Virus record (IMG/VR): IMGVR_UViG_3300036766_002289
Location: 186,001-250,000 of that record
Direction: 5' to 3' (one strand)
Length of the DNA: 64,000 nt
How positions within the stretch are numbered: the first letter of the stretch is position 1; the number at the start of each line of letters is the position of its first letter. The position numbers and the translations under genes were made by a program. Shown piece after piece: positions 2,985 to 54,805 of the stretch. The notes under the pieces are model-generated. The model was not told the origin of the DNA and ran no database searches. It was given only the letters and a program-made list of their open reading frames with translations.

Positions 2985-3621
2985 CCGTTAAGTAAGAACA
3001 AGGCAGTTCTGTCCACGACCCACTATTAAAGTATTTTTCCTGTTTTAGGGCTAAATGGGTATGTCCTGCAATTGCAATGTCACATTCCCATTTTATAGCA
3101 TATAATACAGATTCCTTTGCCACCGTATCAGAACAATGGAGGTAACTCTTACTACTATATTTGGCTAATTTGGCTATATGATGGCTTCTGTCAATCCTTT
3201 GTAAAAACCAATATATCCAATCAGATATCCATGTCAAGAATGGATGGTCACTTAAAAAAGTATCGAATATATCTCCGTGTAATACAATCACTTTCTTTTC
3301 ACCAGTTTCGAAGATGTGGTGAATTGGTTGAAATTCTGCACCTAACAAGTAGGAGACAGTTTTGGCCTCATGGAAGTCGTCATGGTTGCCTTTGACCCAT
3401 ACCACTTCTATGTCGTTAGATAAGGCCCTGATTGCTCCTAGAACTTTCCATTCTTCTTTACGGAGTCGAACATTGAAGGAATCAAATAAGTCGCCAGCAA
3501 TGATTAGCTTCTTTGTTTGATGAGTATTGCATTTGACTTCTCCGAGAAATTTTAGTAACATCTGACTTTGGCAGTTATGCGCCCCTAAATGTACATCTGA
3601 AATTATGGTTGCATCAAACAT
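2926..3621 (-). CDS. Calcineurin-like metallophosphoesterase, LpxH (UDP-2,3-diacylglucosamine hydrolase)-like
   Basis: SDVHLG, GDLFD, GNHD, HGD, GHTH, NSGSW motifs; likely start MFDATIISD at 3621. Confidence 0.85.
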   Translation of the reverse strand: MFDATIISDVHLGAHNCQSQMLLKFLGEVKCNTHQTKKLIIAGDLFDSFNVRLRKEEWKVLGAIRALSNDIEVVWVKGNHDDFHEAKTVSYLLGAEFQPIHHIFETGEKKVIVLHGDIFDTFLSDHPFLTWISDWIYWFLQRIDRSHHIAKLAKYSSKSYLHCSDTVAKESVLYAIKWECDIAIAGHTHLALKQEKYFNSGSWTELPCSYLTVKEGVVELNYYSQECSVNP

Positions 3622-5556: not shown

Positions 5557-6528
5557 ATGAAAGAAATACATGTGTTAGGCTGGTATGATACCCCTACTAG
5601 CGAGACCTTGAAATGCAATATAGGCGACGAAGCCTATAAACTCGCATTCCCAAAACTCTTCCCTAATAATCAGTTCATTTTTTGCGACACCCTTAAAGAC
5701 CTTGACCCCGAAATTGTGATTCTGGGTGGTGGTGATGTTCTCTACCCATCCTTCATTAATAAGATTAAAGCAAGTAAAGCTAGGAAAAAATACGCTTTTT
5801 CAATTAATGTAACTCCTGACATAGAACCAATATTCGACCGAGTAATTTCTAGAAACCGATTAAACAATTTCGAATATCTCCCAGACTTTGTATTTGCGCT
5901 AGAAGGTAATAAAGATCACGGTAAGGCCATTATCAAAAGACTATTTGACCAGAATAGATGTGAATTATATGAAAATGTTGTCATATTGGTAATGAATAGT
6001 TTTCTATGCACAAGAGAAAACACTTTAGCAAGAGATAAAGTTAATTTTGAAAAGGTATGTTTCGAATTAGCCTTAATTATGGATACAACACCCGCTAGTT
6101 TTATTTTACTACCTTTCGGTAATGGATTCCCACATAACGATAAAGTAACAAATGCTTGTGTCTACTCTAAATGCAAACACTGGAAAAAGAACTTATTAGT
6201 GTTTGATTCACTGAGCGTTCAAGAAACATTAGACGTATTTGCGGGTGCAGATGCCTCTATAAATACCAGATTGCACTCCAATATATTCAGTTGTATATCG
6301 GGCATCCCTTTCATTGATATAGGGCATCATGACAAAACCAGGATGTTCATGGAGTCTGTCAATAAACTTAAATGGAGATTTAATTATTGGCATTTCCCAT
6401 TTGGAGAAATAAAAAATCTACTAAATGCCTTCCTTAGTAATAAAGAACTCTATAAAAATGAATCTGCACAAATAAACATCAATAACAAGAAACTTCTAGG
6501 ACAATTAAGCGTGAATTTTGATATATAA
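5557..6528 (+). CDS. Polysaccharide pyruvyl transferase family protein
   Basis: NIGDEA, ILGGGD, PDFVF, TRLHSNI...GIPFI motifs. Confidence 0.8.
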   Translation: MKEIHVLGWYDTPTSETLKCNIGDEAYKLAFPKLFPNNQFIFCDTLKDLDPEIVILGGGDVLYPSFINKIKASKARKKYAFSINVTPDIEPIFDRVISRNRLNNFEYLPDFVFALEGNKDHGKAIIKRLFDQNRCELYENVVILVMNSFLCTRENTLARDKVNFEKVCFELALIMDTTPASFILLPFGNGFPHNDKVTNACVYSKCKHWKKNLLVFDSLSVQETLDVFAGADASINTRLHSNIFSCISGIPFIDIGHHDKTRMFMESVNKLKWRFNYWHFPFGEIKNLLNAFLSNKELYKNESAQININNKKLLGQLSVNFDI

Positions 6529-6531
6529 TTC

Positions 6532-7164
6532 ATGCGATTCAGCGACTGGTTATTAAAAGAAGAAGCACCACAGGTAACAACCGTAAAAGGCACTCCTGAT
6601 AATTTCTACTTGGTTTTCAATAATGGCCAACAAAGTGGCAAAGTCAATAACATCGTGGCCGTTCCTGGTAATCCAGGTATGTATCAAATTAAAAGCCAAG
6701 ATCAAATGAATCCCTATTCAGTCAGCATGAGTCCACAAATTGGTCAAAAATTAATCAGCTTTTCATGGAAACAACAGCCAAAACCCAATATGCAAAAAAT
6801 ATTGGCTTGGCCTACTCCCACTATCCCACAACCACCTCCATATTGGACCCCAGAAATGATGGAAATGAACCATGACAATGCTGGTAAGTACATATCCAAT
6901 AAGCTTTTACAACAAGGAATGGAAGCAAAGAAAGCTGGGATTATAGGAAATAAGATATCTGAATTTATATTTTACTATAGTCCATATCCACCTAGAGTTA
7001 AGAACAGGGTATTAATGAACTTAGGCAATAAGTATCCTGATGCGGATACAATGGAGTTGATTAAGGTTGCGGATGAACATGCAAAGCAGGCTGAGCCTTA
7101 CTTTAGGATGTTAAAGGCAAAGGGCTACGTTTCTGCTTTACAAAGTCCCAAACCAGTAGTATAA
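6532..7164 (+). CDS. Hypothetical protein, candidate head-internal virion protein
   Basis: N-terminus MRFSDWLLKE; ATATATA 4 nt upstream of ATG. Confidence 0.4.
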   Translation: MRFSDWLLKEEAPQVTTVKGTPDNFYLVFNNGQQSGKVNNIVAVPGNPGMYQIKSQDQMNPYSVSMSPQIGQKLISFSWKQQPKPNMQKILAWPTPTIPQPPPYWTPEMMEMNHDNAGKYISNKLLQQGMEAKKAGIIGNKISEFIFYYSPYPPRVKNRVLMNLGNKYPDADTMELIKVADEHAKQAEPYFRMLKAKGYVSALQSPKPVV

Positions 7165-7818
7165 TATTTGGATGATAATCTACAGCGAAGATGGCGACAT
7201 TTGGGAAGCCATGATTTGGATTGAGCGTGAAGTTTATATTGGTATGGGTCAATCCAAAGAAAAAGCTAAAATTGCTTTACTTGAGCATCTTAAAGGTATC
7301 AGGCCAATTTATTTGGAACAAATTAGAAATGCTCAAGAAATTATTGGCAAAATTGAGGAACTTATTCATGAATCAGTGTGATCTTTGTGACAAGCCTACG
7401 CCTATAAGCTCCTATTTCTGTGATGAATGTGGTAAGATTTGCCGAAGAAGTAAAAATAAGGCTCAGCCTGACGTATATTGTGGCAAGCCTGCTGCTTGGG
7501 GTAGTTGTGGATTCTGTCAAGAACACTGGCAGGAGGAATGTAACGAAATTGACACTGTGATGGAGTTTGCTGATGATGCATTCCATGCAGGAGAGTTTGA
7601 TAAGGTTAATAACCGTTTAAAGGAACTTAATGTGCCTAACTTGAGTTCCCAGATGTGTGTGACATGGCTCACTGTGAGTAAGTGGGCAGAAAAAAACCTT
7701 CCATATAGGCCAGAATTCTTCAAGAAGTGTTATGACAGATTAGTAGAAATTCGTGGCGTTGAAGCAGCTAATAAGTTGACAAAGTATCGTGGCGTGGATG
7801 AAGAAATTCAAAAAATGC

Positions 7819-8045
7819 TTAAGGGAATAGAATGAAAACACCGTGGGCCGAACACTATAGACATTGTGAGCAATGTAATCAGGCAACAGAAGTCCGACTT
7901 GCCGAAGCAAAAGATATTTATGATCCAGTTGGCGGTGCAAAGATGTTAAGAAACTGTTGTCCAGAAGGACGAAGGTTATGTATAGAGTCTAGTGAAAAAA
8001 GTACTCCACCTGACAGTATCACAATATATTAAGGGAATAGAATGA
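7819..8045 (+). repeat. 17-bp direct repeat TTAAGGGAATAGAATGA (7819-7835, 8029-8045) flanking ORF 7832-8032
   Basis: Exact match read from sequence; covers RBS and ATG. Confidence 0.85.
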
Positions 8046-8181
8046 GACTTCTTGGGCATTTATTCATGTGGAGTCTTGCTGCATTGCATCTGTTTATAGC
8101 AGAATGTGAACGGCAAAAAGAAAGAACCGCATTGGCGGTTATAATGCTTACTATATTCACCTTGTCTATGCTATTATTCTA

Positions 8182-9044
8182 AGGAAACTTGTGATTAATT
8201 ATAATGTAGATGATGTTAAGTGGTTGTTAAATAAGATTTTATATCTTGAAGAACAAAAGAATGCCCACCCATCTAATTGGCCAACCCACAGAAGAATCTG
8301 GCTGGGTTGTTATGATGTTTGGATGTGTGAACAAGACAGAATTGATGCTGTTGAAATTCCAAAGATGCGAATGAAAGAAGCGGAAGAAGCTGGGTTCATT
8401 AAGAATGAAATAAGGAAAATAGGAAAATTTGATTCCGTGGTTTGGACGGTGACAGAACTCGGCCACGATTTTTTGAAAGAGGAAACTTGTGATGGTTGAA
8501 AGTCGTGTTAAAACAGAATTTAAGGTAAGAAAACTTGAATTCAATATGGGTTTAAATGACCCCGTTGACATGCGTTGTGGTGGACCTGCATCCTTGGCTT
8601 TTTGGGTGTATTCCTCATTATCAGAAGAACATTTGCAATGTATTGCAGAAGACACCGAAGTTCAAAAAATAGTAAGGCAGCATGGTGGTGATGGAAGTTT
8701 TAATATAGCTAACTCAGTTTGGACTGAAAAATTTTGCCATACAGAAAACGAAGTTAAAGAAAACTTATTTAAACTCGCAAAACAATTCTAAAAGGAAAGT
8801 TTGTGATGGAATGTAAATTAGAATGGAAGAAAAATTTCTATCCAGAATCTGTGATGAAGTCTTTGAGCTATGGCTGTTATAACGAAGCATGTTTTGAATG
8901 TGCATCAGTAGATGGTGTCGAAGGTCGTTACGTCAATGAGGGAGTGTGTCCTATACACGGCATTGTGTGTTCTATGTTAGGCGGTGTGTGGGACACAAAT
9001 AGACCCGCACATCCCTGTGGAGCCTATAAAGAAAGTTTGTGATG
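8182..9044 (+). repeat. Junction direct repeats AGGAAACTTGTGAT (8182-8195, 8480-8493) and GAAAGTTTGTGATG (8795-8808, 9031-9044)
   Basis: Two exact 14-bp pairs, each flanking one ORF; the two pairs resemble each other. Confidence 0.8.
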
Positions 9045-9061
9045 AATGTCAAAGGTAATCT

Positions 9062-9823
9062 ATGGACAGAAAACAATACAATAAGGAATATAGAGAAAAA
9101 AGAATAAATCAAGGGCTCTGTGTCGGTTGCGGCTTCCCTAATAATGGAAAAAATCTATGCCAGGAATGTTTGGACAAAGCAACGGCTAAAAGAAAAGAAA
9201 ATATTTTAAAAAGGTTATGTGGATGTGGCAAGCCTAGAAGAGATGGATATCAATCATGTGAAATTTGCTCAAATAAATATAACAAAAATGAATACAACAA
9301 AAATAAAAGATTAATATCTTTGCAAAGGAAAAGTAAAAGAAATAAAAATAAAGAAAAAGGACTATGTGTTTTTTGCACTAAGCCTGCATTGCCCGATAAG
9401 ACCACATGCGAATATCATTTGCAAAAAAGAACAAACTTTAGAAAGCATTGTAGGGAAAAAGGAATTTGTCCTCAATGTGGAGAATTGAAGTCTAATCCAA
9501 AAAATACTTATTGTGATGAACACCAATCTCATTGGAAAATTCGCAAACATGCTGAGGGACTTCGAATCAAAAAAGAAGTAATAAATTATTACAATGAACT
9601 ATCTCAATGTGTATGTTGTGGGGAATCAAATTTGGTCTTTTTGACAATCGACCATATGGACAACAATGGTGCCGAACACCGAAAAAAAATTAATCGTTTT
9701 GGCGAAGGATTTTACAGATGGCTTATAAGCAATAATTTCCCAAATGGTTATCAAGTCTTATGTTTCAATTGTAATTGTGGTAGAAAGATTAATGGTGGTA
9801 TATGTCCTCACAAAATATTTTAG
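9062..9823 (+). CDS. HNH-type homing endonuclease with multiple Cys zinc-binding repeats
   Basis: Repeated CxxC...CxxC/H units; C-terminal CVCCGE...LTIDH...QVLCFNCN. Confidence 0.8.
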   Translation: MDRKQYNKEYREKRINQGLCVGCGFPNNGKNLCQECLDKATAKRKENILKRLCGCGKPRRDGYQSCEICSNKYNKNEYNKNKRLISLQRKSKRNKNKEKGLCVFCTKPALPDKTTCEYHLQKRTNFRKHCREKGICPQCGELKSNPKNTYCDEHQSHWKIRKHAEGLRIKKEVINYYNELSQCVCCGESNLVFLTIDHMDNNGAEHRKKINRFGEGFYRWLISNNFPNGYQVLCFNCNCGRKINGGICPHKIF

Positions 9824-10530
9824 AAAAACTCATTGATTTCCCCAGGATTTTCCATCTCCCGCATAAGCCTAATGCACAAAGAAGCGACCTTATTGCATCA
9901 CAAGAAGATGTGAAGGTTATTTTCGATAACGAAGAAACCATCGTTGAAGAAAAGCTTGACGCTGCAAACTCAGGAATACTTTTTAGTGAAGAAGGTAATT
10001 TTTCAATTCGAAATAGAAATAATATTCTAAATAAAGGCAAAACTGGCCATCTGCGAGGCCCTGCTAAAATGCAATTTGCTCCAATTTATAATTGGGCTTA
10101 CGAAAATAGAGATAAGTTTGAAACGCTTAATAATAATTTAGGATTTGAAGTAAGTGTATTTGGGGAATGGATGGTGGCACTTCATGGGGTTAAGTATGAC
10201 AAACTACCATCTTGGTTCATTCCTTATGAATTATATGATTGGGAACATAAGAAATTTATTTCTCACAAAATTGTTAGAAAATCTTTGCAGGAAGCAGGTT
10301 TTGTGACAGTGCCGTTATTGCATGAAGGACGATTGCCTAATTGGGAGATTTTTGATAAGTTTTGTGCAGAAAAGAGTCCCTATTCAACAACAGATTTAAG
10401 GGAAGGTGTGGTTGTGAAGGTGTCAGATGAGAAATATTTGACTCACAGATTCAAGATGGTTCGTAGGGGTTTTATACAGGGTTGCCACTGGAATGAACGT
10501 GCATTAACTAAGAATAAACTTTGTGATTGA
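9802..10530 (+). CDS. ATP-dependent RNA ligase family protein
   Basis: FPRIFHLP, motif I EEKLDAAN, FGEW, EGVVVK, RFKMVR. Confidence 0.8.
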   Translation: MSSQNILEKLIDFPRIFHLPHKPNAQRSDLIASQEDVKVIFDNEETIVEEKLDAANSGILFSEEGNFSIRNRNNILNKGKTGHLRGPAKMQFAPIYNWAYENRDKFETLNNNLGFEVSVFGEWMVALHGVKYDKLPSWFIPYELYDWEHKKFISHKIVRKSLQEAGFVTVPLLHEGRLPNWEIFDKFCAEKSPYSTTDLREGVVVKVSDEKYLTHRFKMVRRGFIQGCHWNERALTKNKLCD

Positions 10531-11170
10531 CATTATTTCACTTATTGACTCTGGTAAAATCCACCTTGGTATGACTAAGGCGGATTTACGTATTTTATTA
10601 GGCCCGCCGCATTGCTGGGGCAGTACTTCGCGTAAATACAGAGAGCCTTGTATATGGAAGTATGATAATGTAGAATTTTGGTGGCTTACTAAGAAATATA
10701 GAGTGCCTTATCCAGGGCCACCGCTAACTGGTGTGATGAGCGACACTGAAAGTCATGACAGCGAACATAAACTGCTATTAGGAGGCTGATATGGGCATTA
10801 GTTGTGCGGGTCGTAATTCTGATGCGCGATATGATGAGCAAAAAGGTTTTAAGGGCGGTTATATACCGCCACCCAGTTCCAACCCAGAAAATTATGAAAT
10901 TTTGAGAAGTCTACAGATGGGCAAATATCTGATTGTGGAGATTAAGTATCCTGACTGCAAGAATTACGAAGGGAAAAAGATAATGGTCTATGAGGGAGAT
11001 ATTAAACAGTTGGTATCGCAAAAGAAAATTGACCCACATTTTTCTGATAATTGTGCTTTTAAGTCACCAATAGGACGCTTTGAACCGACAAATCGAGGGT
11101 GGAATATGGCCAAAACATTTTGTGCTGGGATGGCTGGTCAGACTATCAATTGGACTGCGGAAGATTTCAA

Positions 11171-12013
11171 ATGATTAAACTAAGTAACGGGCATGAATTT
11201 AAATATTGTGCAGCATCAGGTGCATTAGGTTACGACGGAAAAGGATATTTTTGGGAAGCCCCTTTCCGATGGCTTAAAATACTACGCCCTGAAGAATTTA
11301 CAATAATCACAAAAACCATTACCCTTGAACCACGAAAAGGAGAGTATCGTTGGTGGAAGCCTTGGAAGACTATTAAGATTAAAAATGATTACGTCATCAA
11401 TGCAATGGGATTGCCAAATGATGGACTTAAATGGTGGTTGAAAAATGTTTATGGTAGATTAAACTATGATACAATTGTCTCAGTAGCCGCGTGGACTCCA
11501 TTTGAAGCCAGAACAATAGCACATGAGCTTAACTATTGTGGTATCCAAGCCATTGAACTTAATCTTTCTTGCCCAAATGTAGAACATCCAGACAGTTTCC
11601 CTATAATCAAGGAGTTTTTGAAATTTACTAGGCATCCTGTGATATTGAAAATCGAATATGATGAGGATTATATTGCCCTTTTAAAAGAATTTCATGGTAA
11701 GATTGAAGCCGTTGACGCAATTAATACTATCCCTTTTTATGATATGGCAGTAGGACAATCTCCACTTCACCCATTAGAAGGTGGAATTAGTGGTCCATTA
11801 ATTTCATTTAAATCAAAGAAAATTTTGCGTGATATTAAAGCCCATTATCCTGGTGTTCAGGTGATTAGTGGTGGTGGAATTTACACTCTTGAAGAGGCGA
11901 AACGCAGGATTGCTATGAAGGCAGATGCGATATCGTTTGGTACAGTTTTTCTTAAGAAATGTTGGTTGCCAAATTTAATAATTAAAAAGCTTGCCGAACA
12001 TGATAGAAAATAA
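11171..12013 (+). CDS. pyrD: Dihydroorotate dehydrogenase-like protein
   Basis: AASG, TKTIT, INAMGLPNDG, ELNLSCPN, AINT, GGISGP, SGGGI motifs. Confidence 0.85.
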   Translation: MIKLSNGHEFKYCAASGALGYDGKGYFWEAPFRWLKILRPEEFTIITKTITLEPRKGEYRWWKPWKTIKIKNDYVINAMGLPNDGLKWWLKNVYGRLNYDTIVSVAAWTPFEARTIAHELNYCGIQAIELNLSCPNVEHPDSFPIIKEFLKFTRHPVILKIEYDEDYIALLKEFHGKIEAVDAINTIPFYDMAVGQSPLHPLEGGISGPLISFKSKKILRDIKAHYPGVQVISGGGIYTLEEAKRRIAMKADAISFGTVFLKKCWLPNLIIKKLAEHDRK

Positions 12014-12034
12014 ATGCAATGCTTATATATTTAC

Positions 12035-12856
12035 ATGAAACAAAACTTAATTGGAAAAATTTATGGGTATCTTGAAGTAATTTCTTGCCTTGGTAGTGAT
12101 CGTAATGGTAAAAAGGCCGCTGTGCATTGGATGTGTAGGTGCAAATGTGGCAATACCGTTGCTGTAACCACTGCCAAACTTAATTTTGGTTTACGTAAAA
12201 GTTGCGGGTGTCTGAAAGTGGAAAAAGCGATAATAAATGGAAAAATAGGGAGTGAGAAGAATAAAACACATAATGGCACCTATACTCCAGAATATAAAAC
12301 ATGGACAATGATTAAAAGTAGATGTAATAATCCAAAATCAAGTGGCTACGAGAATTATGGAGGAAGGGGTATTAAAATTTGTGAGAGATGGAACAACTCA
12401 TTCCAGAACTTTTTAGATGATATGGGGAAGAAGCCAAATACAGATTTTTGCATTGATAGAATAAATGTCAATGAAGGATATTACAAGGATAATTGCCAAT
12501 GGACTAGTTTAAAATCTCAACAAAATAATAAAAGAACAAATATTTATATAGAATTTGGGGGCAATAAAGCAACGTTGGCAGAATGGGCCACCAAAATTGG
12601 AATATGCGGGGCCACTTTAAGAAAACGCATGAAGAATATGTCAATTGAAGACGCCCTAACATCGCCAAAGAAAATGGTGGGCCGCAGTCGTAAACTATCA
12701 ACTGATATTAACTTGAATGCGGTTATTAAAAATTTAAATTTAGCATTAAATCAGATTGGTAGAAATTGCCTTATTCAGCATTTTGGAGAAGCTGGTACTG
12801 ATTTGGTGAATTCTATTAAGGTTTTATCCGAGTTAGTCGATGTAAACATAGCTTAG
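12035..12856 (+). CDS. HNH-type phage homing endonuclease
   Basis: WMCRCKCG, KSCGC, RCNNP...YGGRGIKICERW, IDRINVNEGY...NCQW. Confidence 0.85.
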   Translation: MKQNLIGKIYGYLEVISCLGSDRNGKKAAVHWMCRCKCGNTVAVTTAKLNFGLRKSCGCLKVEKAIINGKIGSEKNKTHNGTYTPEYKTWTMIKSRCNNPKSSGYENYGGRGIKICERWNNSFQNFLDDMGKKPNTDFCIDRINVNEGYYKDNCQWTSLKSQQNNKRTNIYIEFGGNKATLAEWATKIGICGATLRKRMKNMSIEDALTSPKKMVGRSRKLSTDINLNAVIKNLNLALNQIGRNCLIQHFGEAGTDLVNSIKVLSELVDVNIA

Positions 12857-12863
12857 TTGTACC
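12848..12863 (+). promoter_or_regulatory. 16-bp motif copy 1 (ATAGCTTAGTTGTACC), putative phage-specific promoter
   Basis: Consensus copy; followed by AGGAG and ATG at 12875. Confidence 0.75.
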
Positions 12864-13092
12864 AGGAGACTCTCATGCGCATGAAAATTGCTGCCATTTC
12901 TGCTTGTCTGAGTGGAATTTCCCTGATCTCGACCGTGGTTTTTATCCATAATCCGAATATCTTGCTTACTTGTATTTGGCTGGCATCATTATTCATGGGA
13001 ATTACTACATTTTGTCTTTGGTTGGAATGTCGGAGTACCACAAGCCAACCGACACGGCCGACAAGATCAACGTCGAGGGACTTGGAAGAAAA

Positions 13093-13266
13093 ATGACTGT
13101 ACGCGAAGCATTACTTGAAGAATTAACTAATCTCTGGGCGTTAGAAGCCAGTCTTTGACCAGAAAATACTCTTCAGTGTCGTGAAGAGATTCGCTTGGTC
13201 GAAGCGAAATTGGATGAATGGGACAAACTTACTGCTGCTGTGGCAAAAGTATGCCTAAAGGAATGA
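13093..13266 (+). pseudogene. Short ORF interrupted by in-frame TGA (13156-13158); readthrough candidate or pseudogene
   Basis: Frame stays open 35 codons after TGA and ends 1 nt before the next ATG; two 7-bp hairpins follow the TGA. Confidence 0.45.
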
Positions 13267-13684
13267 AATGATGAAAAAATGGTATGAAGAAGTTGTAATT
13301 AATGGCCTATTGCATCATAAGTTTCTTGCAAATGGTTTACTTTATTTAATGGATGATTATAAAGTTACGCCACCGCTACCACAAATTTGCTATAACCACT
13401 ACTGCCGTAAGGTTTTAGGGGAAGAATACCATTCCACAATGTTTGGAACAAGAGAAACTGGTTTTCCAGATTGCTGGTTATGCAATGAGTGTTGGGCAAA
13501 GTTTGATGGCCAAAAGATGAGGGGACGATTTGCGATGATCGGATACTCCCACAATCAGAGTGTGTCTATATTAGCTGCCATTGAAAGAGATTGCGGGAAG
13601 GAATTATTTGAACTTGGTAGGCCAGAAGATGAATCTCGTTATACTGAATCTGTCACCGAATGGGTTGAATGGCAAAATCCCTGG

Positions 13685-13700
13685 ATAGCTTAGTTGTACC
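13685..13700 (+). promoter_or_regulatory. 16-bp motif copy 2
   Basis: ATAGCTTAGTTGTACC upstream of the sigma-like gene. Confidence 0.75.
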
Positions 13701-48047: not shown

Positions 48048-48503
48048 ATGATAACAATTTATACAGATGGTTCCGCTTGGCCTAATCCAGGTCCAGGCGG
48101 TTGGGCCGCTATCATTGATAAAGAAGAAATATCTGGCTCAGAGAAACAAACCACTAATAACCGCATGGAAATGACTGCTGTACTACGCAGTCTTCAGTAT
48201 GTACCAAAGAATTCTAGCGTCAAAATACATTCTGACAGTCAATATGTGGTAAATGGTATTGGTTGTTGGGCTAATGGCAAACCAACTAAGAAAGGTTGGA
48301 TGGTTAATTGGCGTAAGCGTGGTTGGCGGCTTTTCGATGGTGAAGTAAAAAATGTTGATTTGTGGAAAGAATTATATGAGCTTGTAAGACTCTATGATAG
48401 TGTAGAACTTGTATGGATCAGAGGTCATAACGATGACCCATTAAACGAACGCTGCGATGAATTGGCACTAAAGGCGAGATTAAATAATGAAACAAGAACT
48501 TGA
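48048..48503 (+). CDS. rnhA: Ribonuclease HI
   Basis: IYTDGS..PNPGPGGW, TTNNRMEM, SDSQYV, VKNVDLW, WIRGH...NERCDELA. Confidence 0.95.
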   Translation: MITIYTDGSAWPNPGPGGWAAIIDKEEISGSEKQTTNNRMEMTAVLRSLQYVPKNSSVKIHSDSQYVVNGIGCWANGKPTKKGWMVNWRKRGWRLFDGEVKNVDLWKELYELVRLYDSVELVWIRGHNDDPLNERCDELALKARLNNETRT

Positions 48504-48882
48504 AAAACAATTGCAAGATAAATTCCCAAAGCAATTCAGGGACTTATACGGACATAAAGCTGAAACTTGCATGGCCTGGGGTTTAACTTGCGGCGAAGGT
48601 TGGTTCCCTATCATTGAGCAAGCCTGCACTAAAATCCAAGAAGTATTGGATAAACACCCCGACATGGATTTTAAGTGGTTGCAAATTAAGGAAAAATTTG
48701 GGCAATTAACACTGTATGGTGGCTTTACCAATGAAGAAGGTATGCCGAACGAAATTTGCGATATTATCAAAGAGACTCAAAAGGATTCGTTAAAGGTTTG
48801 TGAGATTTGCGGGACAAGGGAAGGCGAAATAACTACAAAGGGCATATGGATCAGGACACTATGTAACGGATGCAGGTATTAG

Positions 48883-52299: not shown

Positions 52300-53708
52300 A
52301 AGGCAGGAGACTTAAAATGATTACTGGAAAAGCATGGTCAGATGTGAATACGCTGCTAGCCTTTCTAAGGGGTGGCGGCATGGATGTGGTGGAGCTAGTT
52401 GAGCAGTATTTTAGTAGATTCAATAATCCCGCCCCCGCCGAGCTATTGGCAGAACAAATTGAAAAAGTTCAGAAGCATTTGGATGAAGGAACTAGAGAGG
52501 ATTGTCTCTAATGGAATGTTCAGAATTCATGCATATCGTCAAGAATTTCCAACCTCAAGACATTGCCCAAGTAGAGCGGATCGCAATGATCTGCCATTTG
52601 CAAGAATGTACAGAATGCAGTCAATTCATCCTTGAACAAATCGAAGAACATGGTATACAGGATAATCCCGAAGTGAAATCTTTGGCGGAAATGGATAGGA
52701 TGGTGGTCTAATGGCTACTGTATTTTGCCAGAAATGGATCGAAAGTGAACGTGGTTGGGGTATGCGAGACGATGGAGTTTCCTTACACTTAACAGAAGCT
52801 GACCTTACAGCGTTCATCAAGGAATATTGGGCTGCTATGCCAAAGGAAGTTCCTGACGAATATGCAAGGCCAGATGGTTTGCCGAAGCGTATCGAACTTG
52901 ATAAAAGAACTAAACTTTACAAGTCCTTAGCTAAGTCCCCGCAAGGTATTTGGCATTATGGTGAAGTAAAATGTTAGACATAAACAATCTTCAATTGCAG
53001 TATAAATGCCCAAAATGTTATGGGACAGGTAAACTAAGTGATAGTTGCTACCAAGCACGAAATTTGTATGAAAATTGTTATGAATGCGGCGGATTTGGCT
53101 ATAAGCTCAATCCTTTAGGTGAAGAGATTCTAGAATTGGTAAAACATCGTTTAGGACTTACAATTAGGACTGAAGCCAATGAATAAGATTTTGTTAGTAT
53201 TTGTGCTGATTCTCTGTGGATGTTCAGGAAATTTCAAAGAGAATAAAACAGTGGGTAACGAACTACAGCTTGAGGGCAGTAGTTTTCACCTTAAAATTAG
53301 AGAATTTGAGTACCAAGGCTGCGAATATATTGCTATTGGTTCTGGATGTTATCTTACAATTACTCATAAAGGTAATTGCAAACATTGTATGGAGCGTAAC
53401 AAGCAATGAAATGGCTCGTAACTAAGAATCCATTGACCTTAAATTTAACTCCGCTTGAAGCGGGGGTTTGGGTTCTTACAGGAGTATGTTTCTATTTTTA
53501 TCTTAGGAGTTAGAGATGCGAACAGCACAATTAGACAGTAAGACCCCGATGGCGTTTTCTATTGATGATACTGTTGCGGCTAATCTTATTCAAAAGGCCA
53601 CAGAGTATTCCAAGAAGTCCAAGAAGACGGCATCCAGTTTTGTAAGTAACCTGTTAAAGACGGCGATGGAAAACCAAGACATTCTTAACAAGATCGAAGG
53701 GGAATGAC

Positions 53709-54254
53709 ATGGATAGGAAAGCAAAGGCTCGTGTCGCAATCGCATTTGACGTTCTTCAAAGCGTCGATTCATTAAAAGTTGACAATCATGGCTATTATTT
53801 GTCTGACCTGGATGGGACTGTAACTATAGATAAGTACGGCGATGATGTTGATGTACGTAGGCAATTTAAGGGTGACATTAAAGAAGATGCTACCAAACAT
53901 TTGCCAAGATTGCAGAAATGCCATGTTTGTGCCCTTGGCGCATGTCTTATTAGCCAAGTAAAATTGTTTAATAAGATGTCGATTAGCAAGCTTGTAGTGG
54001 AAGATAGAAGCAATCCTAAGCACCAAGCGATTGATCCTAACCGACAAATAATTTCTAAATTACTTTCTAAGTTCTTTTGTCAAAGTCAACTAGACTTAAT
54101 TGAGTCAGCATTTGAAATAGGTGGGGACTATTACTCTCAGGCTCCATATTCTGTTGATGCGGAAGACTTTGGAAGAAATTATGATGACCCGAAAAAGCGT
54201 TTGAAAGCAATCATGGCCAATATCATTGTGAACGATGGTGAATTTTGTCCTTAA
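53709..54254 (+). CDS. Hypothetical protein, tandem paralog A
   Basis: MDRKAKARVAIAFDVLQ...CHVCALGA...IIVNDGEFCP. Confidence 0.8.
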   Translation: MDRKAKARVAIAFDVLQSVDSLKVDNHGYYLSDLDGTVTIDKYGDDVDVRRQFKGDIKEDATKHLPRLQKCHVCALGACLISQVKLFNKMSISKLVVEDRSNPKHQAIDPNRQIISKLLSKFFCQSQLDLIESAFEIGGDYYSQAPYSVDAEDFGRNYDDPKKRLKAIMANIIVNDGEFCP

Positions 54255-54265
54255 AGGTGATTAAC

Positions 54266-54805
54266 ATGGATAGGAAAGCAAAGGCTCGTGTCGCAATCGC
54301 ATTTGACGTTCTTCAAAGCGTTGATTCATTAAAAGTCACTAATGATGGTTGGTACCTAGCGGACCCAACTGGCAAGTATTATAAAGACCAAAATGGTGAG
54401 GAATGCATTGATCTTAGGGATTTTAAGGGCGATGTAAAAGAAGAGGCGACTAAACACTTATCCAAATTGCAGAAATGTGAAGTCTGCGCTCTTGGGGCAT
54501 GTGTAATTAGTCAAGTTAAGCTGTTCAATAAACTGCCAATGAGTAAGTTACTATCTGGGGACAGACCTAATACGAGAGAAATTAATCCTAACAGAGATAT
54601 GGTTTCTAAATCACTATCAAGGTTCTTTTCCCAGGAACAACTTAATTTGATCGAGACAGCATTTGAAGCAGGCGGTCATCATCTTATAGTGGCTAACCCT
54701 GACCCTAATGCTGTTGAGTTTGGAAGAAATTATGATAGCCCGAAAAAGCGTTTAAAAGCAATTATGGGCAATATCATAGTGAACGATGGTGAATTCTGTC
54801 CTTAA
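54266..54805 (+). CDS. Hypothetical protein, tandem paralog B
   Basis: Same N- and C-termini as paralog A. Confidence 0.8.
   Translation: MDRKAKARVAIAFDVLQSVDSLKVTNDGWYLADPTGKYYKDQNGEECIDLRDFKGDVKEEATKHLSKLQKCEVCALGACVISQVKLFNKLPMSKLLSGDRPNTREINPNRDMVSKSLSRFFSQEQLNLIETAFEAGGHHLIVANPDPNAVEFGRNYDSPKKRLKAIMGNIIVNDGEFCP

What the first reader, a model, noticed from the sequence alone, without database searches (positions are those of the whole stretch)
7819..9044. Successive small genes are each bracketed by direct repeats covering RBS and start codon
Seen: TTAAGGGAATAGAATGA (7819, 8029) flanks ORF 7832-8032; AGGAAACTTGTGAT (8182, 8480) flanks ORF 8191-8499; GAAAGTTTGTGATG (8795, 9031) flanks ORF 8803-9042, with similarity continuing beyond the exact match. 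Three exact 14-17-bp pairs within about 1.2 kb, each one gene apart, seem unlikely from RBS bias alone. Inference: single-gene cassettes are gained or lost by recombination at translation-initiation regions, so an incoming gene is automatically expressed.
Basis: partly seen in the sequence, partly recalled or inferred. Interest (0 to 1): 0.65.

Follow-up and report, generated by a model that had tools for sequence, protein, structure and literature searches.

The report
Gene insertions duplicate phage start sites
In a variable stretch of a huge phage genome, small genes have been inserted one at a time into the short ribosome-binding/start sequences between neighbouring genes, and each insertion left that sequence duplicated on both sides, which suggests how such phages can add a gene and have it translated at once.

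Summary
All three exact repeat pairs are real and not chance. A Markov null gives about 4 such local pairs in the whole 390-kb record; three lie within 1.2 kb (P about 4e-7). They are not the genome's general RBS: the motifs occur nowhere else in the record.

The repeats are duplicated gene junctions (Shine-Dalgarno, start codon and the overlapping end of the upstream gene). They sit in a stretch with no internal promoter-like site above background, between conserved gene D and an RNA ligase.

Related huge phages supply the predicted empty sites:
- One relative (L004) has D running straight into F through an ATGA overlap, with no E.
- Two relatives have G running straight into I through a single junction copy, with no H.
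- Homologues of E, G and H sit in other contexts in relatives and lack these repeats.
- The copy at 9031 is the RNA ligase's ancestral start site, stranded by an HNH endonuclease gene insertion.
- A second locus elsewhere in the genome shows the same structure, also with an empty site.

Best reading: ORF-sized insertions duplicate the resident junction, so both the incoming and the downstream gene keep a start site. The repeat copies probably recombine afterwards. The closest known system is PeSL-mediated shuffling in T4-type phages; this would be a translational, recombinase-free variant. The pattern is rare genome-wide.

The parts
7137..7165 (+). Promoter-like site (TTTACA, 17 nt, TATAAT) ending 7 nt before the start of gene C; probable start of the transcription unit that holds the cassettes
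   Evidence: 11 of 12 matches, the best site in 6400-11200. No + strand terminator-like site up to 11200. The equivalent TATAAT box lies before C in L004.
7368..7835 (+). Gene D (155 aa, Cys-rich), the conserved left anchor of the variable island. Its last codons (KGIE, stop) are the first 17-mer copy.
   Evidence: Homologues in L001, L004 and L007. L001 and L007 end ...KGLE-stop at the homologous place.
7819..7835 (+). Repeat 1, left copy: the native 3' end of D, now also the Shine-Dalgarno and start (ATG 7832) of E
7832..8032 (+). Gene E (66 aa, CxxC motifs): inserted cassette. Its start codon lies in the left repeat copy and its stop codon in the right copy.
   Evidence: Absent between D and F in L004. 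Present in the X3 relative. A 79%-identical homologue in L007/L008 is fused behind the N-terminus of an unrelated gene. pN 0.22 against pS 0.73.
8029..8045 (+). Repeat 1, right copy: a duplicate of D's 3' end that supplies E's stop codon and F's Shine-Dalgarno and start (ATG 8042)
8042..8182 (+). Gene F (46 aa, hydrophobic). In L004 it follows D directly through an ATGA overlap.
   Evidence: the L004 homologue shares the start ATGAGAC and 13 of its last 17 residues.
8182..8195 (+). Repeat 2, left copy (junction J3): the start region downstream of F, which drives G (GTG 8191)
   Evidence: The homologous junction after F in L004 drives a different gene, Y1.
8191..8499 (+). Gene G (102 aa). Its C-terminal tail (KEETCDG) is encoded by the next gene's start region.
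   Evidence: 57% identity to L004 G. A 59% homologue lies at another locus in G001 with a different, context-specific tail.
8480..8495 (+). Repeat 2, right copy (junction J4): the end of G plus the start region of H. It also forms the left arm of the imperfect pair around H.
8492..8791 (+). Gene H (99 aa; 100 aa from GTG 8489): a cassette inserted in the window's lineage
   Evidence: Skipped in the X3 contig (joint 8457 to 8797) and absent in L004. The only homologue lies in an unrelated context 131 kb away in G001, and in L006.
8793..8809 (+). Repeat 3, left copy (junction J5): the start region of I; right arm of the pair around H
8806..9042 (+). Gene I (78 aa; 79 from GTG 8803). Its last codons and stop (KESL, TGA) are encoded by the RNA ligase's ancestral start region.
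   Evidence: 85% identity to L004 I, which is followed directly by the RNA ligase. Absent from L001, L003, L007 and G001.
9031..9044 (+). Repeat 3, right copy (junction J6): the relic start region of RNA ligase K, now separated from K
   Evidence: The same sequence directly starts K in L004, and near-identical sequences do so in L001, L003 and L007. Here it opens only 22 codons.
9062..9823 (+). Gene J, an HNH-endonuclease-like gene inserted between K's start region and K's body. Its 3' end supplies K's new start codon.
   Evidence: PHROG HNH endonuclease, E 0.0023. Absent in L001, L003, L004 and L007. Paralogues elsewhere in the record.
9802..10530 (+). RNA ligase K, the conserved right anchor of the island
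   Evidence: Pfam RNA_ligase, E 9e-23. Homologues at 62-85% identity in all relatives.
10513..10528 (+). K-L junction, a further member of the TTTGTGAT junction family (start GTG 10523); it encodes K's tail (KLCD)
   Evidence: conserved in L001, L003, L004 and L007.

Best explanation
The repeats are duplicated gene junctions left by single-ORF insertions into a tightly packed stretch that has no internal promoter-like site above background.

In this operon the start region of each gene (Shine-Dalgarno, start codon) overlaps the last codons and stop of the gene before it. When an ORF-sized piece of DNA lands between the Shine-Dalgarno and the first codons of such a junction, the product found here carries the junction twice. 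The left copy keeps the upstream gene's end and now initiates the incoming ORF. The right copy gives the incoming ORF its tail and stop, and restores the start region of the resident downstream gene.

Shown: E and H (and a 143-aa gene at a second locus) are present or absent between relatives exactly at such junctions, the empty sites hold one junction, and the same genes sit elsewhere in relatives without these repeats.

Inferred:
- The joints formed at microhomologies: stop codon plus Shine-Dalgarno on one side, the start codon on the other. Template switching or break repair against an ectopic donor would do this.
- Repeated insertion upstream of the RNA ligase built an array of near-identical start regions (8182, 8480, 8795, 9031, 10520).
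- These copies later exchange by short-homology recombination or gene conversion.
- The incoming gene is translated at once.
For: 1. E. The left 17-mer is D's native 3' end (L001 and L007 end with a 13-of-17 matching sequence). L004 has D's stop overlapping F's start with no E. E's own start and stop codons lie inside the two repeat copies. In L007, homology to E runs only from the ATG to the stop.

2. H. The X3 contig skips 8458-8796 and joins G's tail to I through one junction. That junction is identical over 19 nt to the G-I junction of outgroup L004, so H is a gain in the window's lineage. H's only homologue lies between unrelated genes in G001 and L006. Homology there starts a few codons in and ends just after the stop plus AAAGGA.

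3. Second locus. The gene at record positions 256041-256472 (G000 coordinates) is flanked by a 17-nt repeat with one mismatch. G001 has the empty site, and its homologue lies 27 kb away.

4. G's homologue in G001 lies between an RNase H-like gene and a 133-aa gene. Those two genes are adjacent in the window (48430-48540). The protein tails differ by context and are encoded by the resident junction.

5. The repeat sequences differ between loci: each is simply the local junction. No tyrosine integrase was found in the record, and the junctions show no significant RNA structure.

6; no + strand terminator-like site and no promoter-like excess over shuffles in 6400-11200; all four cassettes have pN well below pS, so they are real genes.
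Against: - No insertion event was observed directly and the donors are unknown. The microhomologies are read from homologues that are only 72-79% identical.
- The exact 14-nt identity of 8182 and 8480 does not follow from simple duplication. The ancestral G-I junction, shared by X3 and L004, differs from it at 2 of the 14 positions. A later conversion or a homologous exchange between copies is therefore needed.
- The pair around I is conserved in L004 even though synonymous sites are near saturation. It is maintained by function, and reading it as an insertion scar is an extrapolation.
- L004's D is 10 codons shorter, so no relative shows the literal single 17-mer.
- The X3 evidence is one assembled contig.
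- Only about 4 loci among about 460 junction pairs show the pattern.
Confidence: 0.62

Rival explanations
1. Portable-linker model. The start-region motif is a pre-existing conserved linker. Cassettes move by homologous recombination between linker copies, within a genome or between co-infecting relatives, possibly through excised circles. On this view the repeats cause the mobility rather than result from it.
For: - Four to five consecutive junctions share one motif that occurs nowhere else in the record. TTGTGATG clusters here with P 2e-8.
- The same motif starts K, L, X3 and other island genes in L001, L003, L004 and L007.
- Synteny with the X3 relative ends immediately after TTGTGATG at 9031-9044.
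- At least three different genes lie upstream of this one junction in different relatives.
- The 8182 = 8480 identity is easiest to explain by exchange between copies.
- I (82% nucleotide identity to L004) is more similar than its neighbours G and K (69%).
Against: - The repeats around E and around the 143-aa gene have unrelated sequences that are just the local junctions.
- Homologues of H, G and the 143-aa gene at their other loci carry no such linker, so nothing portable travels with the gene.
- A single resident junction cannot accept a linear cassette by two ordinary crossovers.
- No circles or back-joints were seen, although contigs could not show them.
Confidence: 0.28
2. Regulatory convergence only. 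The shared motif is a translational signal (coupled UGAUG stop-start, or an operator for a repressor) kept alike by selection. Gene-boundary breakpoints would reflect only survival of viable recombinants, and the repeats would have no historical link to insertions.
For: - The motif is conserved between the window and L004 although pS is 0.54-0.73.
- It places a TGA stop one base before or overlapping the ATG.
- The junctions are unstructured, as accessible start sites should be.
Against: - The right 17-mer copy reproduces D's last five codons in a frame that is not read there. No regulatory need explains that.
- The empty sites match removal of exactly one copy.
- No RegA-type repressor was found, but the control genomes also gave no match, so this says little.
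- Random junction pairs never reach this similarity.
Confidence: 0.1
3. Site-specific or transposon-type insertion: integron-like cassettes, or target-site duplications made by a mobile element's enzyme.
For: Direct repeats flanking an insert resemble target-site duplications. Several HNH endonuclease genes are present, one of them at this hot spot.
Against: - No tyrosine integrase in the 390-kb record, with working controls.
- The inserts are bare ORFs without terminal inverted repeats or an enzyme gene.
- Repeat length (14-19 nt) and sequence differ between sites.
- There is no attC-like fold.
Confidence: 0.03
4. Chance or generic RBS similarity, or diverged tandem paralogues that kept their 5' ends.
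For: All start regions share a purine-rich stretch and ATG or GTG.
Against: (P about 4e-7; 0 of 6000 random junction pairs). No similarity among proteins D to J.
Confidence: 0.01

Closest known systems
PeSL (promoter-early stem-loop) cassettes of T4-type phages (Arbiol et al. 2010, PMC2839356; Comeau et al. 2014, PMC4122927)
   Same: Short conserved expression signals repeated between small ORFan genes in a hyperplastic region. Insertions, deletions and replacements between close relatives have their breakpoints at these signals. An incoming gene is expressed from the signal.
   Different: PeSLs are strong sigma-70-like promoters plus terminator stem-loops, and recombination between copies was shown physically (mini-circles). 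Here the unit is a 14-19-nt translation-initiation region inside an operon, without promoter or stem-loop. It also encodes the tail of the upstream protein. At two loci it is simply a duplicate of the local junction rather than a genome-wide motif.
Morons of lambdoid and other phages (from my own knowledge: Juhala, Hendrix and colleagues)
   Same: Single extra genes are found between two genes that are adjacent in relatives.
   Different: Morons typically bring their own promoter and terminator. These cassettes bring neither, and use a duplicated resident start region.
Short boundary homologies and relaxed homologous recombination in phage mosaicism (Martinsohn et al. 2008, PMC2327257)
   Same: Exchange at short or diverged homologies at module boundaries.
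   Different: That work concerns exchange of alleles or modules between temperate phages by Red-type recombinases. Here the signature is duplication of a junction around a newly inserted ORF, and no recombinase has been identified.
Integron gene cassettes
   Same: An array of promoterless single-gene cassettes inserted at one hot spot and expressed from resident signals.
   Different: No integrase, no attC or attI, and no folded recombination site. Expression is supplied at the level of translation.
Free-standing homing endonuclease insertion (as for T4 seg and mob genes; from my own knowledge)
   Same: Gene J (HNH-like) sits exactly between the RNA ligase's start region and its body, where relatives have an uninterrupted gene.
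   Different: This explains only J and the stranded copy at 9031, not the duplicated junctions around E, G, H and I.

Membership tests
PeSL-type mobile regulatory cassette | Sigma-70-like early promoter inside the repeat | tested here: not met
   no promoter-like site at any of the six repeat copies. The only strong site is 7137-7165, upstream of C.
PeSL-type mobile regulatory cassette | Stem-loop terminator inside the repeat | tested here: not met
   z-scores of -1.7 to +2.1 for 61-nt windows on all six junctions; no + strand terminator-like site.
PeSL-type mobile regulatory cassette | Indels and replacements between close relatives bounded by the repeats | tested here: met
   E, H and J, and the genes upstream of K, differ between relatives with breakpoints in the junctions.
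PeSL-type mobile regulatory cassette | Circular excision products from recombination between neighbouring copies | not testable with these tools
   All three runs are held as contigs, and contigs cannot show rare circles.
Integron cassette array | Tyrosine integrase (IntI) next to the array | tested here: not met
   no PF00589 match in the 390-kb record; all 14 control genomes matched.
Integron cassette array | attC-type imperfect inverted repeat at each cassette end | tested here: not met
   no significant fold. The repeats are direct, and their sequence differs between loci.
Transposon target-site duplication | Insert carries terminal inverted repeats and/or a transposase; duplication of fixed length | tested here: not met
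   The inserts are single ORFs with no Pfam or PHROG hit. The duplications measure 17, about 16 and 17 nt, and their ends coincide with stop/Shine-Dalgarno and start codons.
Moron | Own promoter and terminator flanking the inserted gene | tested here: not met
Translationally coupled overlapping junction (ATGA / TGATG) | Stop codon of the upstream gene overlapping or within a few nt of the downstream start | tested here: met
   D/E share ATGA. G ends 8 nt after H's ATG. I's TGA overlaps the relic ATG at 9042. In L004, D/F share ATGA.

The most novel reading that the evidence does not exclude
Operon-internal start regions of huge phages act as recombinase-free docking sites. Bare ORF cores copied from elsewhere in the genome or from other phages are captured at a junction, which is duplicated each time. 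A junction that reads as a stop in one frame and a start in another (the TTGTGATG type) spreads into an array upstream of the RNA ligase. That array would be a translational analogue of an integron or of PeSL shuffling, and would give these phages a standing mechanism for trying out ORFan genes.
Probability: 0.25. Interest if true: 0.8.

Novelty: new variant of a known kind. Interest (0 to 1): 0.6.

Why it matters
Huge phages carry hundreds of small ORFan genes, and how these are acquired and expressed is poorly understood. This locus gives base-level before-and-after states for several single-gene gains. They show that a promoterless ORF can be added inside an operon without damaging either neighbour, because the shared stop/start junction is duplicated.

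If the pattern is general, it explains three things: why mosaic breakpoints in phages fall so exactly at gene boundaries, why the terminal residues of cassette proteins depend on context, and how arrays of identical start regions arise. It also gives annotators a practical signature, flanking junction repeats, for spotting recently gained genes.

Tried and rejected
- Phage GenBank collection: only a remote 66% match to a 595-kb uncultured phage.
- IMG/VR and JGI metagenome scans: with protein A, with the K alignment, and with E-start and I-start DNA patterns. These added nothing beyond L001.
- Pfam and PHROG on E, F, G, H and I: no family.
- Tandem-paralogue idea: no similarity among proteins D to J.
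- Genome-wide RBS consensus idea: rejected, because the motifs are unique to this place.
- RegA-type translational repressor: no match, but the control genomes did not match either, so this is uninformative.
- Tyrosine integrase and RecA: absent from the 390-kb record, which is only part of a 590-kb contig.
- RNA structure at the junctions: none.
- DNA was not retrievable for three other relatives of K: the contigs holding P0003 and P0004, and the second contig holding P0001.
- My first genome-wide junction test was swamped by an unrelated promoter-like motif and by repeat proteins. I redid it with those excluded.

Full report
WHAT THE WINDOW IS. The window is positions 186001-250000 of a 390,039-bp virus record. 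That record is identical over 20.5 kb to part of a 590,099-bp JGI sediment-metagenome contig. Relatives carrying the same RNA ligase lie on contigs of 587, 595 and 596 kb. This is therefore a huge phage, and the 390-kb record is only part of the contig. No tyrosine integrase was found in the record.

CHECK OF THE OBSERVATION.
- An order-5 Markov null gives about 4 exact local pairs of 14 nt or more per whole record. Three within 1.3 kb has P about 4e-7.
- The motifs are not the genome's standard RBS. GGAAA.TTGTGAT and the core of the 17-mer occur only here. Four of the twelve + strand TTGTGATG copies fall within 1 kb (P 2e-8).
- A first genome-wide comparison of adjacent junctions was dominated by an unrelated intergenic motif and by repeat proteins. 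With those removed, 3 of 461 adjacent pairs reach an ungapped score of 14, against 0 of 6000 random same-strand pairs. Two of the three are in this region, and the third is a separate locus discussed below.

ANATOMY.
- The best promoter-like site (7137-7165) ends 7 nt before gene C. Promoter-like sites in 6400-11200 are no more frequent than in shuffles, and no + strand terminator-like site follows up to 11200. C, D, E, F, G, H, I, J, K and L therefore look like one transcription unit, and the small genes have no promoter-like site of their own above background.
- The junctions are compact and dual-use. The 17-mer at 7819 encodes D's last residues and stop, and holds E's start. The copy at 8029 holds E's stop and F's Shine-Dalgarno and start.
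- The junction at 8480 encodes G's tail (KEETCDG) and H's start. The one at 8795 is I's start. The one at 9031 encodes I's last codons and stop.
- The junctions at 8182, 8480, 8795 and 9031, and the K-L junction near 10520, form one family.
- None of the junctions folds better than shuffled sequence.
- Proteins E to I have no Pfam or PHROG family and are not paralogues of one another. All have pN far below pS against their homologues, so they are real genes.

COMPARATIVE EVIDENCE. I found five relatives with usable DNA, plus one contig seen only through laid runs.
- L001/G001: IMG/VR record of 373 kb, K 84% identical.
- L003: K 85% identical.
- L007/L008: found through the E homologue.
- L004: K 62% identical; used as the outgroup.
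- L005: K 63% identical.
- The X3 relative: a 7.9-kb contig from an unrelated sediment study, with 10 of its 14 laid pieces 90-95% alike and 4 under 90%.

Gene D and RNA ligase K are conserved anchors. What lies between them differs in every lineage:
- Window: E, F, G, H, I, J.
- X3 relative: E, F, G, I, then something else.
- L004: F, Y1, Y2, G, I.
- L001: X1, X2, X3.
- L007: X1, an X2-E fusion, X3.
- L003: X2, a tiny hydrophobic ORF and an unrelated 69-aa gene.

GENE E.
- The left 17-mer is D's native end: L001 and L007 have a 13-of-17 matching sequence encoding KGLE-stop.
- In L004, D's TGA overlaps the ATG of the F homologue (ATGA, followed by the same GAC as in the window), with no E. This is the architecture predicted by deleting E and one repeat copy.
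- E's homologue in L007/L008 sits in a different place, fused behind about 30 codons of X2. Homology to the window runs only from E's ATG to its stop.
- The two ends of the 17-mer coincide with E's stop region (TTAAGGG) and E's start (ATGA). That is what a joint at those two microhomologies would produce. This step is inference.

GENE H.
- The X3 contig skips 8458-8796. G's tail there (…EKEVCDGM, stop) runs into I's start through a single junction.
- Outgroup L004 has the same junction, identical over 19 nt. H is therefore a gain in the window's lineage.
- H is bracketed by 8480-8495 and 8793-8809 (15 matches, 1 mismatch, 1 gap).
- H's only homologue (72%) lies in G001 at 63.5 kb, and in L006, between unrelated genes. 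Those flanking genes have no counterpart in the window's record. Homology begins a few codons into H and ends just after the stop and AAAGGA. No TTGTGATG motif is present at that locus.

GENES G AND I.
- G's homologue in G001 (59%) lies between an RNase H-like gene and a 133-aa gene. Those two genes are directly adjacent in the window at 48430-48540.
- G's C-terminal tail differs by context and is encoded by whichever junction it sits in.
- The I-K adjacency, with both flanking junction copies, is conserved in L004 even though pS is 0.54-0.73. This pair is therefore old and kept by selection.
- I is absent from the L001 clade.

THE COPY AT 9031.
- In L004 the same sequence directly starts K. 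Near-identical sequences start K in L001, L003 and L007.
- In the window, the HNH-like gene J is inserted right after ...GTGATGAAT, and J's 3' end supplies K's new ATG. The copy at 9031 is thus a stranded start region that now opens only 22 codons.
- In the X3 relative, similarity to the window ends immediately after the same TTGTGATG.
- This one junction therefore has at least three different upstream partners and three different downstream continuations among relatives. It is a hot spot.

A SECOND LOCUS. Outside the window, at record positions 256041-256472, a 143-aa Zn-ribbon gene is flanked by a 17-nt repeat with one mismatch (TAAGGArTAAACATGGA). The repeat again spans the upstream stop, the Shine-Dalgarno and the start. 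In G001 the upstream gene's end runs directly into the downstream 69-aa gene, and the 143-aa homologue lies 27 kb away. This repeats the pattern with a different junction sequence.

INTERPRETATION.
- The repeat sequences differ between loci, and in each case they equal the local junction. The same genes at their other loci carry no such flank. The simplest account is that insertion duplicates the resident junction, rather than a portable linker travelling with the gene.
- Because a junction serves both neighbours, the insertions found here carry it twice. The incoming ORF then inherits a working start region.
- The serial array of one motif upstream of K points to a second layer. So does the exact identity of 8182 and 8480: the ancestral G-I junction differs from it at 2 of those 14 positions, and by a rough estimate of my own the chance of both changing to match by independent substitution is of the order of 1e-3. 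The higher similarity of gene I to L004 (82% against 69% for G and K) points the same way.
- I rank junction duplication on insertion first (0.62) and pure linker recombination second (0.28). The two are not exclusive.

LIMITS.
- The molecular mechanism (template switch, break repair, or a role for the many HNH genes) is inferred.
- Donors are unknown.
- The X3 evidence is one assembled contig.
- Circles could not be looked for.
- Expression was not tested.
- The record searched for enzymes is only two thirds of the contig.

Noticed in passing
window 12854, 13691, 16246, 34588, 34774, 36680, 44272, 58570, 58785, 59704, 60153; densest at record positions 256-317 kb: A motif (T)ATAGCTTAGTTGTACCAA occurs 101 times on the + strand and 6 times on the - strand. 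It typically lies 10-25 nt before an ATG and in places follows GC-rich hairpin-like sequences. It looks like a phage-specific promoter, possibly a PeSL-like promoter/terminator unit separating many small genes.
   Followed up: partly
window 7137-7172; L001 9020-9040 and 9425-9445; L004 about 3475-3494: Several island genes (C, X1, X2) have a TATAAT-type box ending about 6-8 nt before the ATG. This suggests leaderless or near-leaderless transcripts at the heads of operons, in contrast to the coupled TTGTGATG starts inside them.
   Followed up: no
window 9048-9816: The HNH-like gene J is inserted a few bases after the RNA ligase's original start codon. J carries its own Shine-Dalgarno, and its 3' end supplies a new start and four new N-terminal codons for the ligase. 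Paralogues lie at record positions 113.5-114.2 kb and 218.9-219.2 kb.
   Followed up: partly
window 12014-13267: Gene O (280 aa, Cys-rich N-terminus) and the stretch after it are absent in L004, where the DHO_dh-family (dihydroorotate dehydrogenase-like) gene N is followed after 127 nt by the homologue of window 13268-13693. This is probably another mobile insertion.
   Followed up: no
window 48430-48540: The RNase H-like gene and the following 133-aa gene overlap here. The relative G001 has a homologue of cassette gene G inserted at this junction, flanked by a weak (9 of 14) direct repeat of the junction.
   Followed up: yes
record positions 256024-256494 (outside the window; L012 1524-1994): Second instance of a single gene flanked by a duplicated stop/Shine-Dalgarno/start junction (17 nt, one mismatch), with an empty site in G001. 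The upstream 136-aa gene is reduced to a 19-codon remnant in G001.
   Followed up: yes
window 7556, 8850; L001 9324, 9940: In-frame TGTGATG (Val-Met) sequences with an upstream purine-rich stretch occur inside ORFs (D, I, X1, X3). They may be internal starts or relics of junctions absorbed by gene fusion.
   Followed up: no
L007 1908-2204 (also L008): The E homologue is fused in frame behind the first 30 or so codons of X2 and replaces the rest of that gene. The right breakpoint lies at the start region of X3.
   Followed up: partly
L001 9940-10000; L007 2405-2463: Two copies of the K start region lie 40 nt apart, with a 3-codon ORF and a conserved GCCTATAAA between them. The same nonamer lies inside gene I's 3' end in the window (9022-9030). 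This may be the remnant of a lost cassette or a promoter.
   Followed up: no
window 53705-54803 (record positions 239.7-240.8 kb): Tandem paralogous genes with a 551-557-nt period share exact stretches of up to 58 nt.
   Followed up: no
whole record: IMG/VR classes both the 390-kb and the 373-kb records as proviruses. The trimming is probably an artefact, and the true genome is likely near 590 kb.
   Followed up: partly
window 6532-7164 and 8806-9042 against L004: Mosaic similarity to L004: genes B and I are 82% identical at nucleotide level, while A, D, G and K are 69-74%. This suggests gene-by-gene exchange between lineages.
   Followed up: partly
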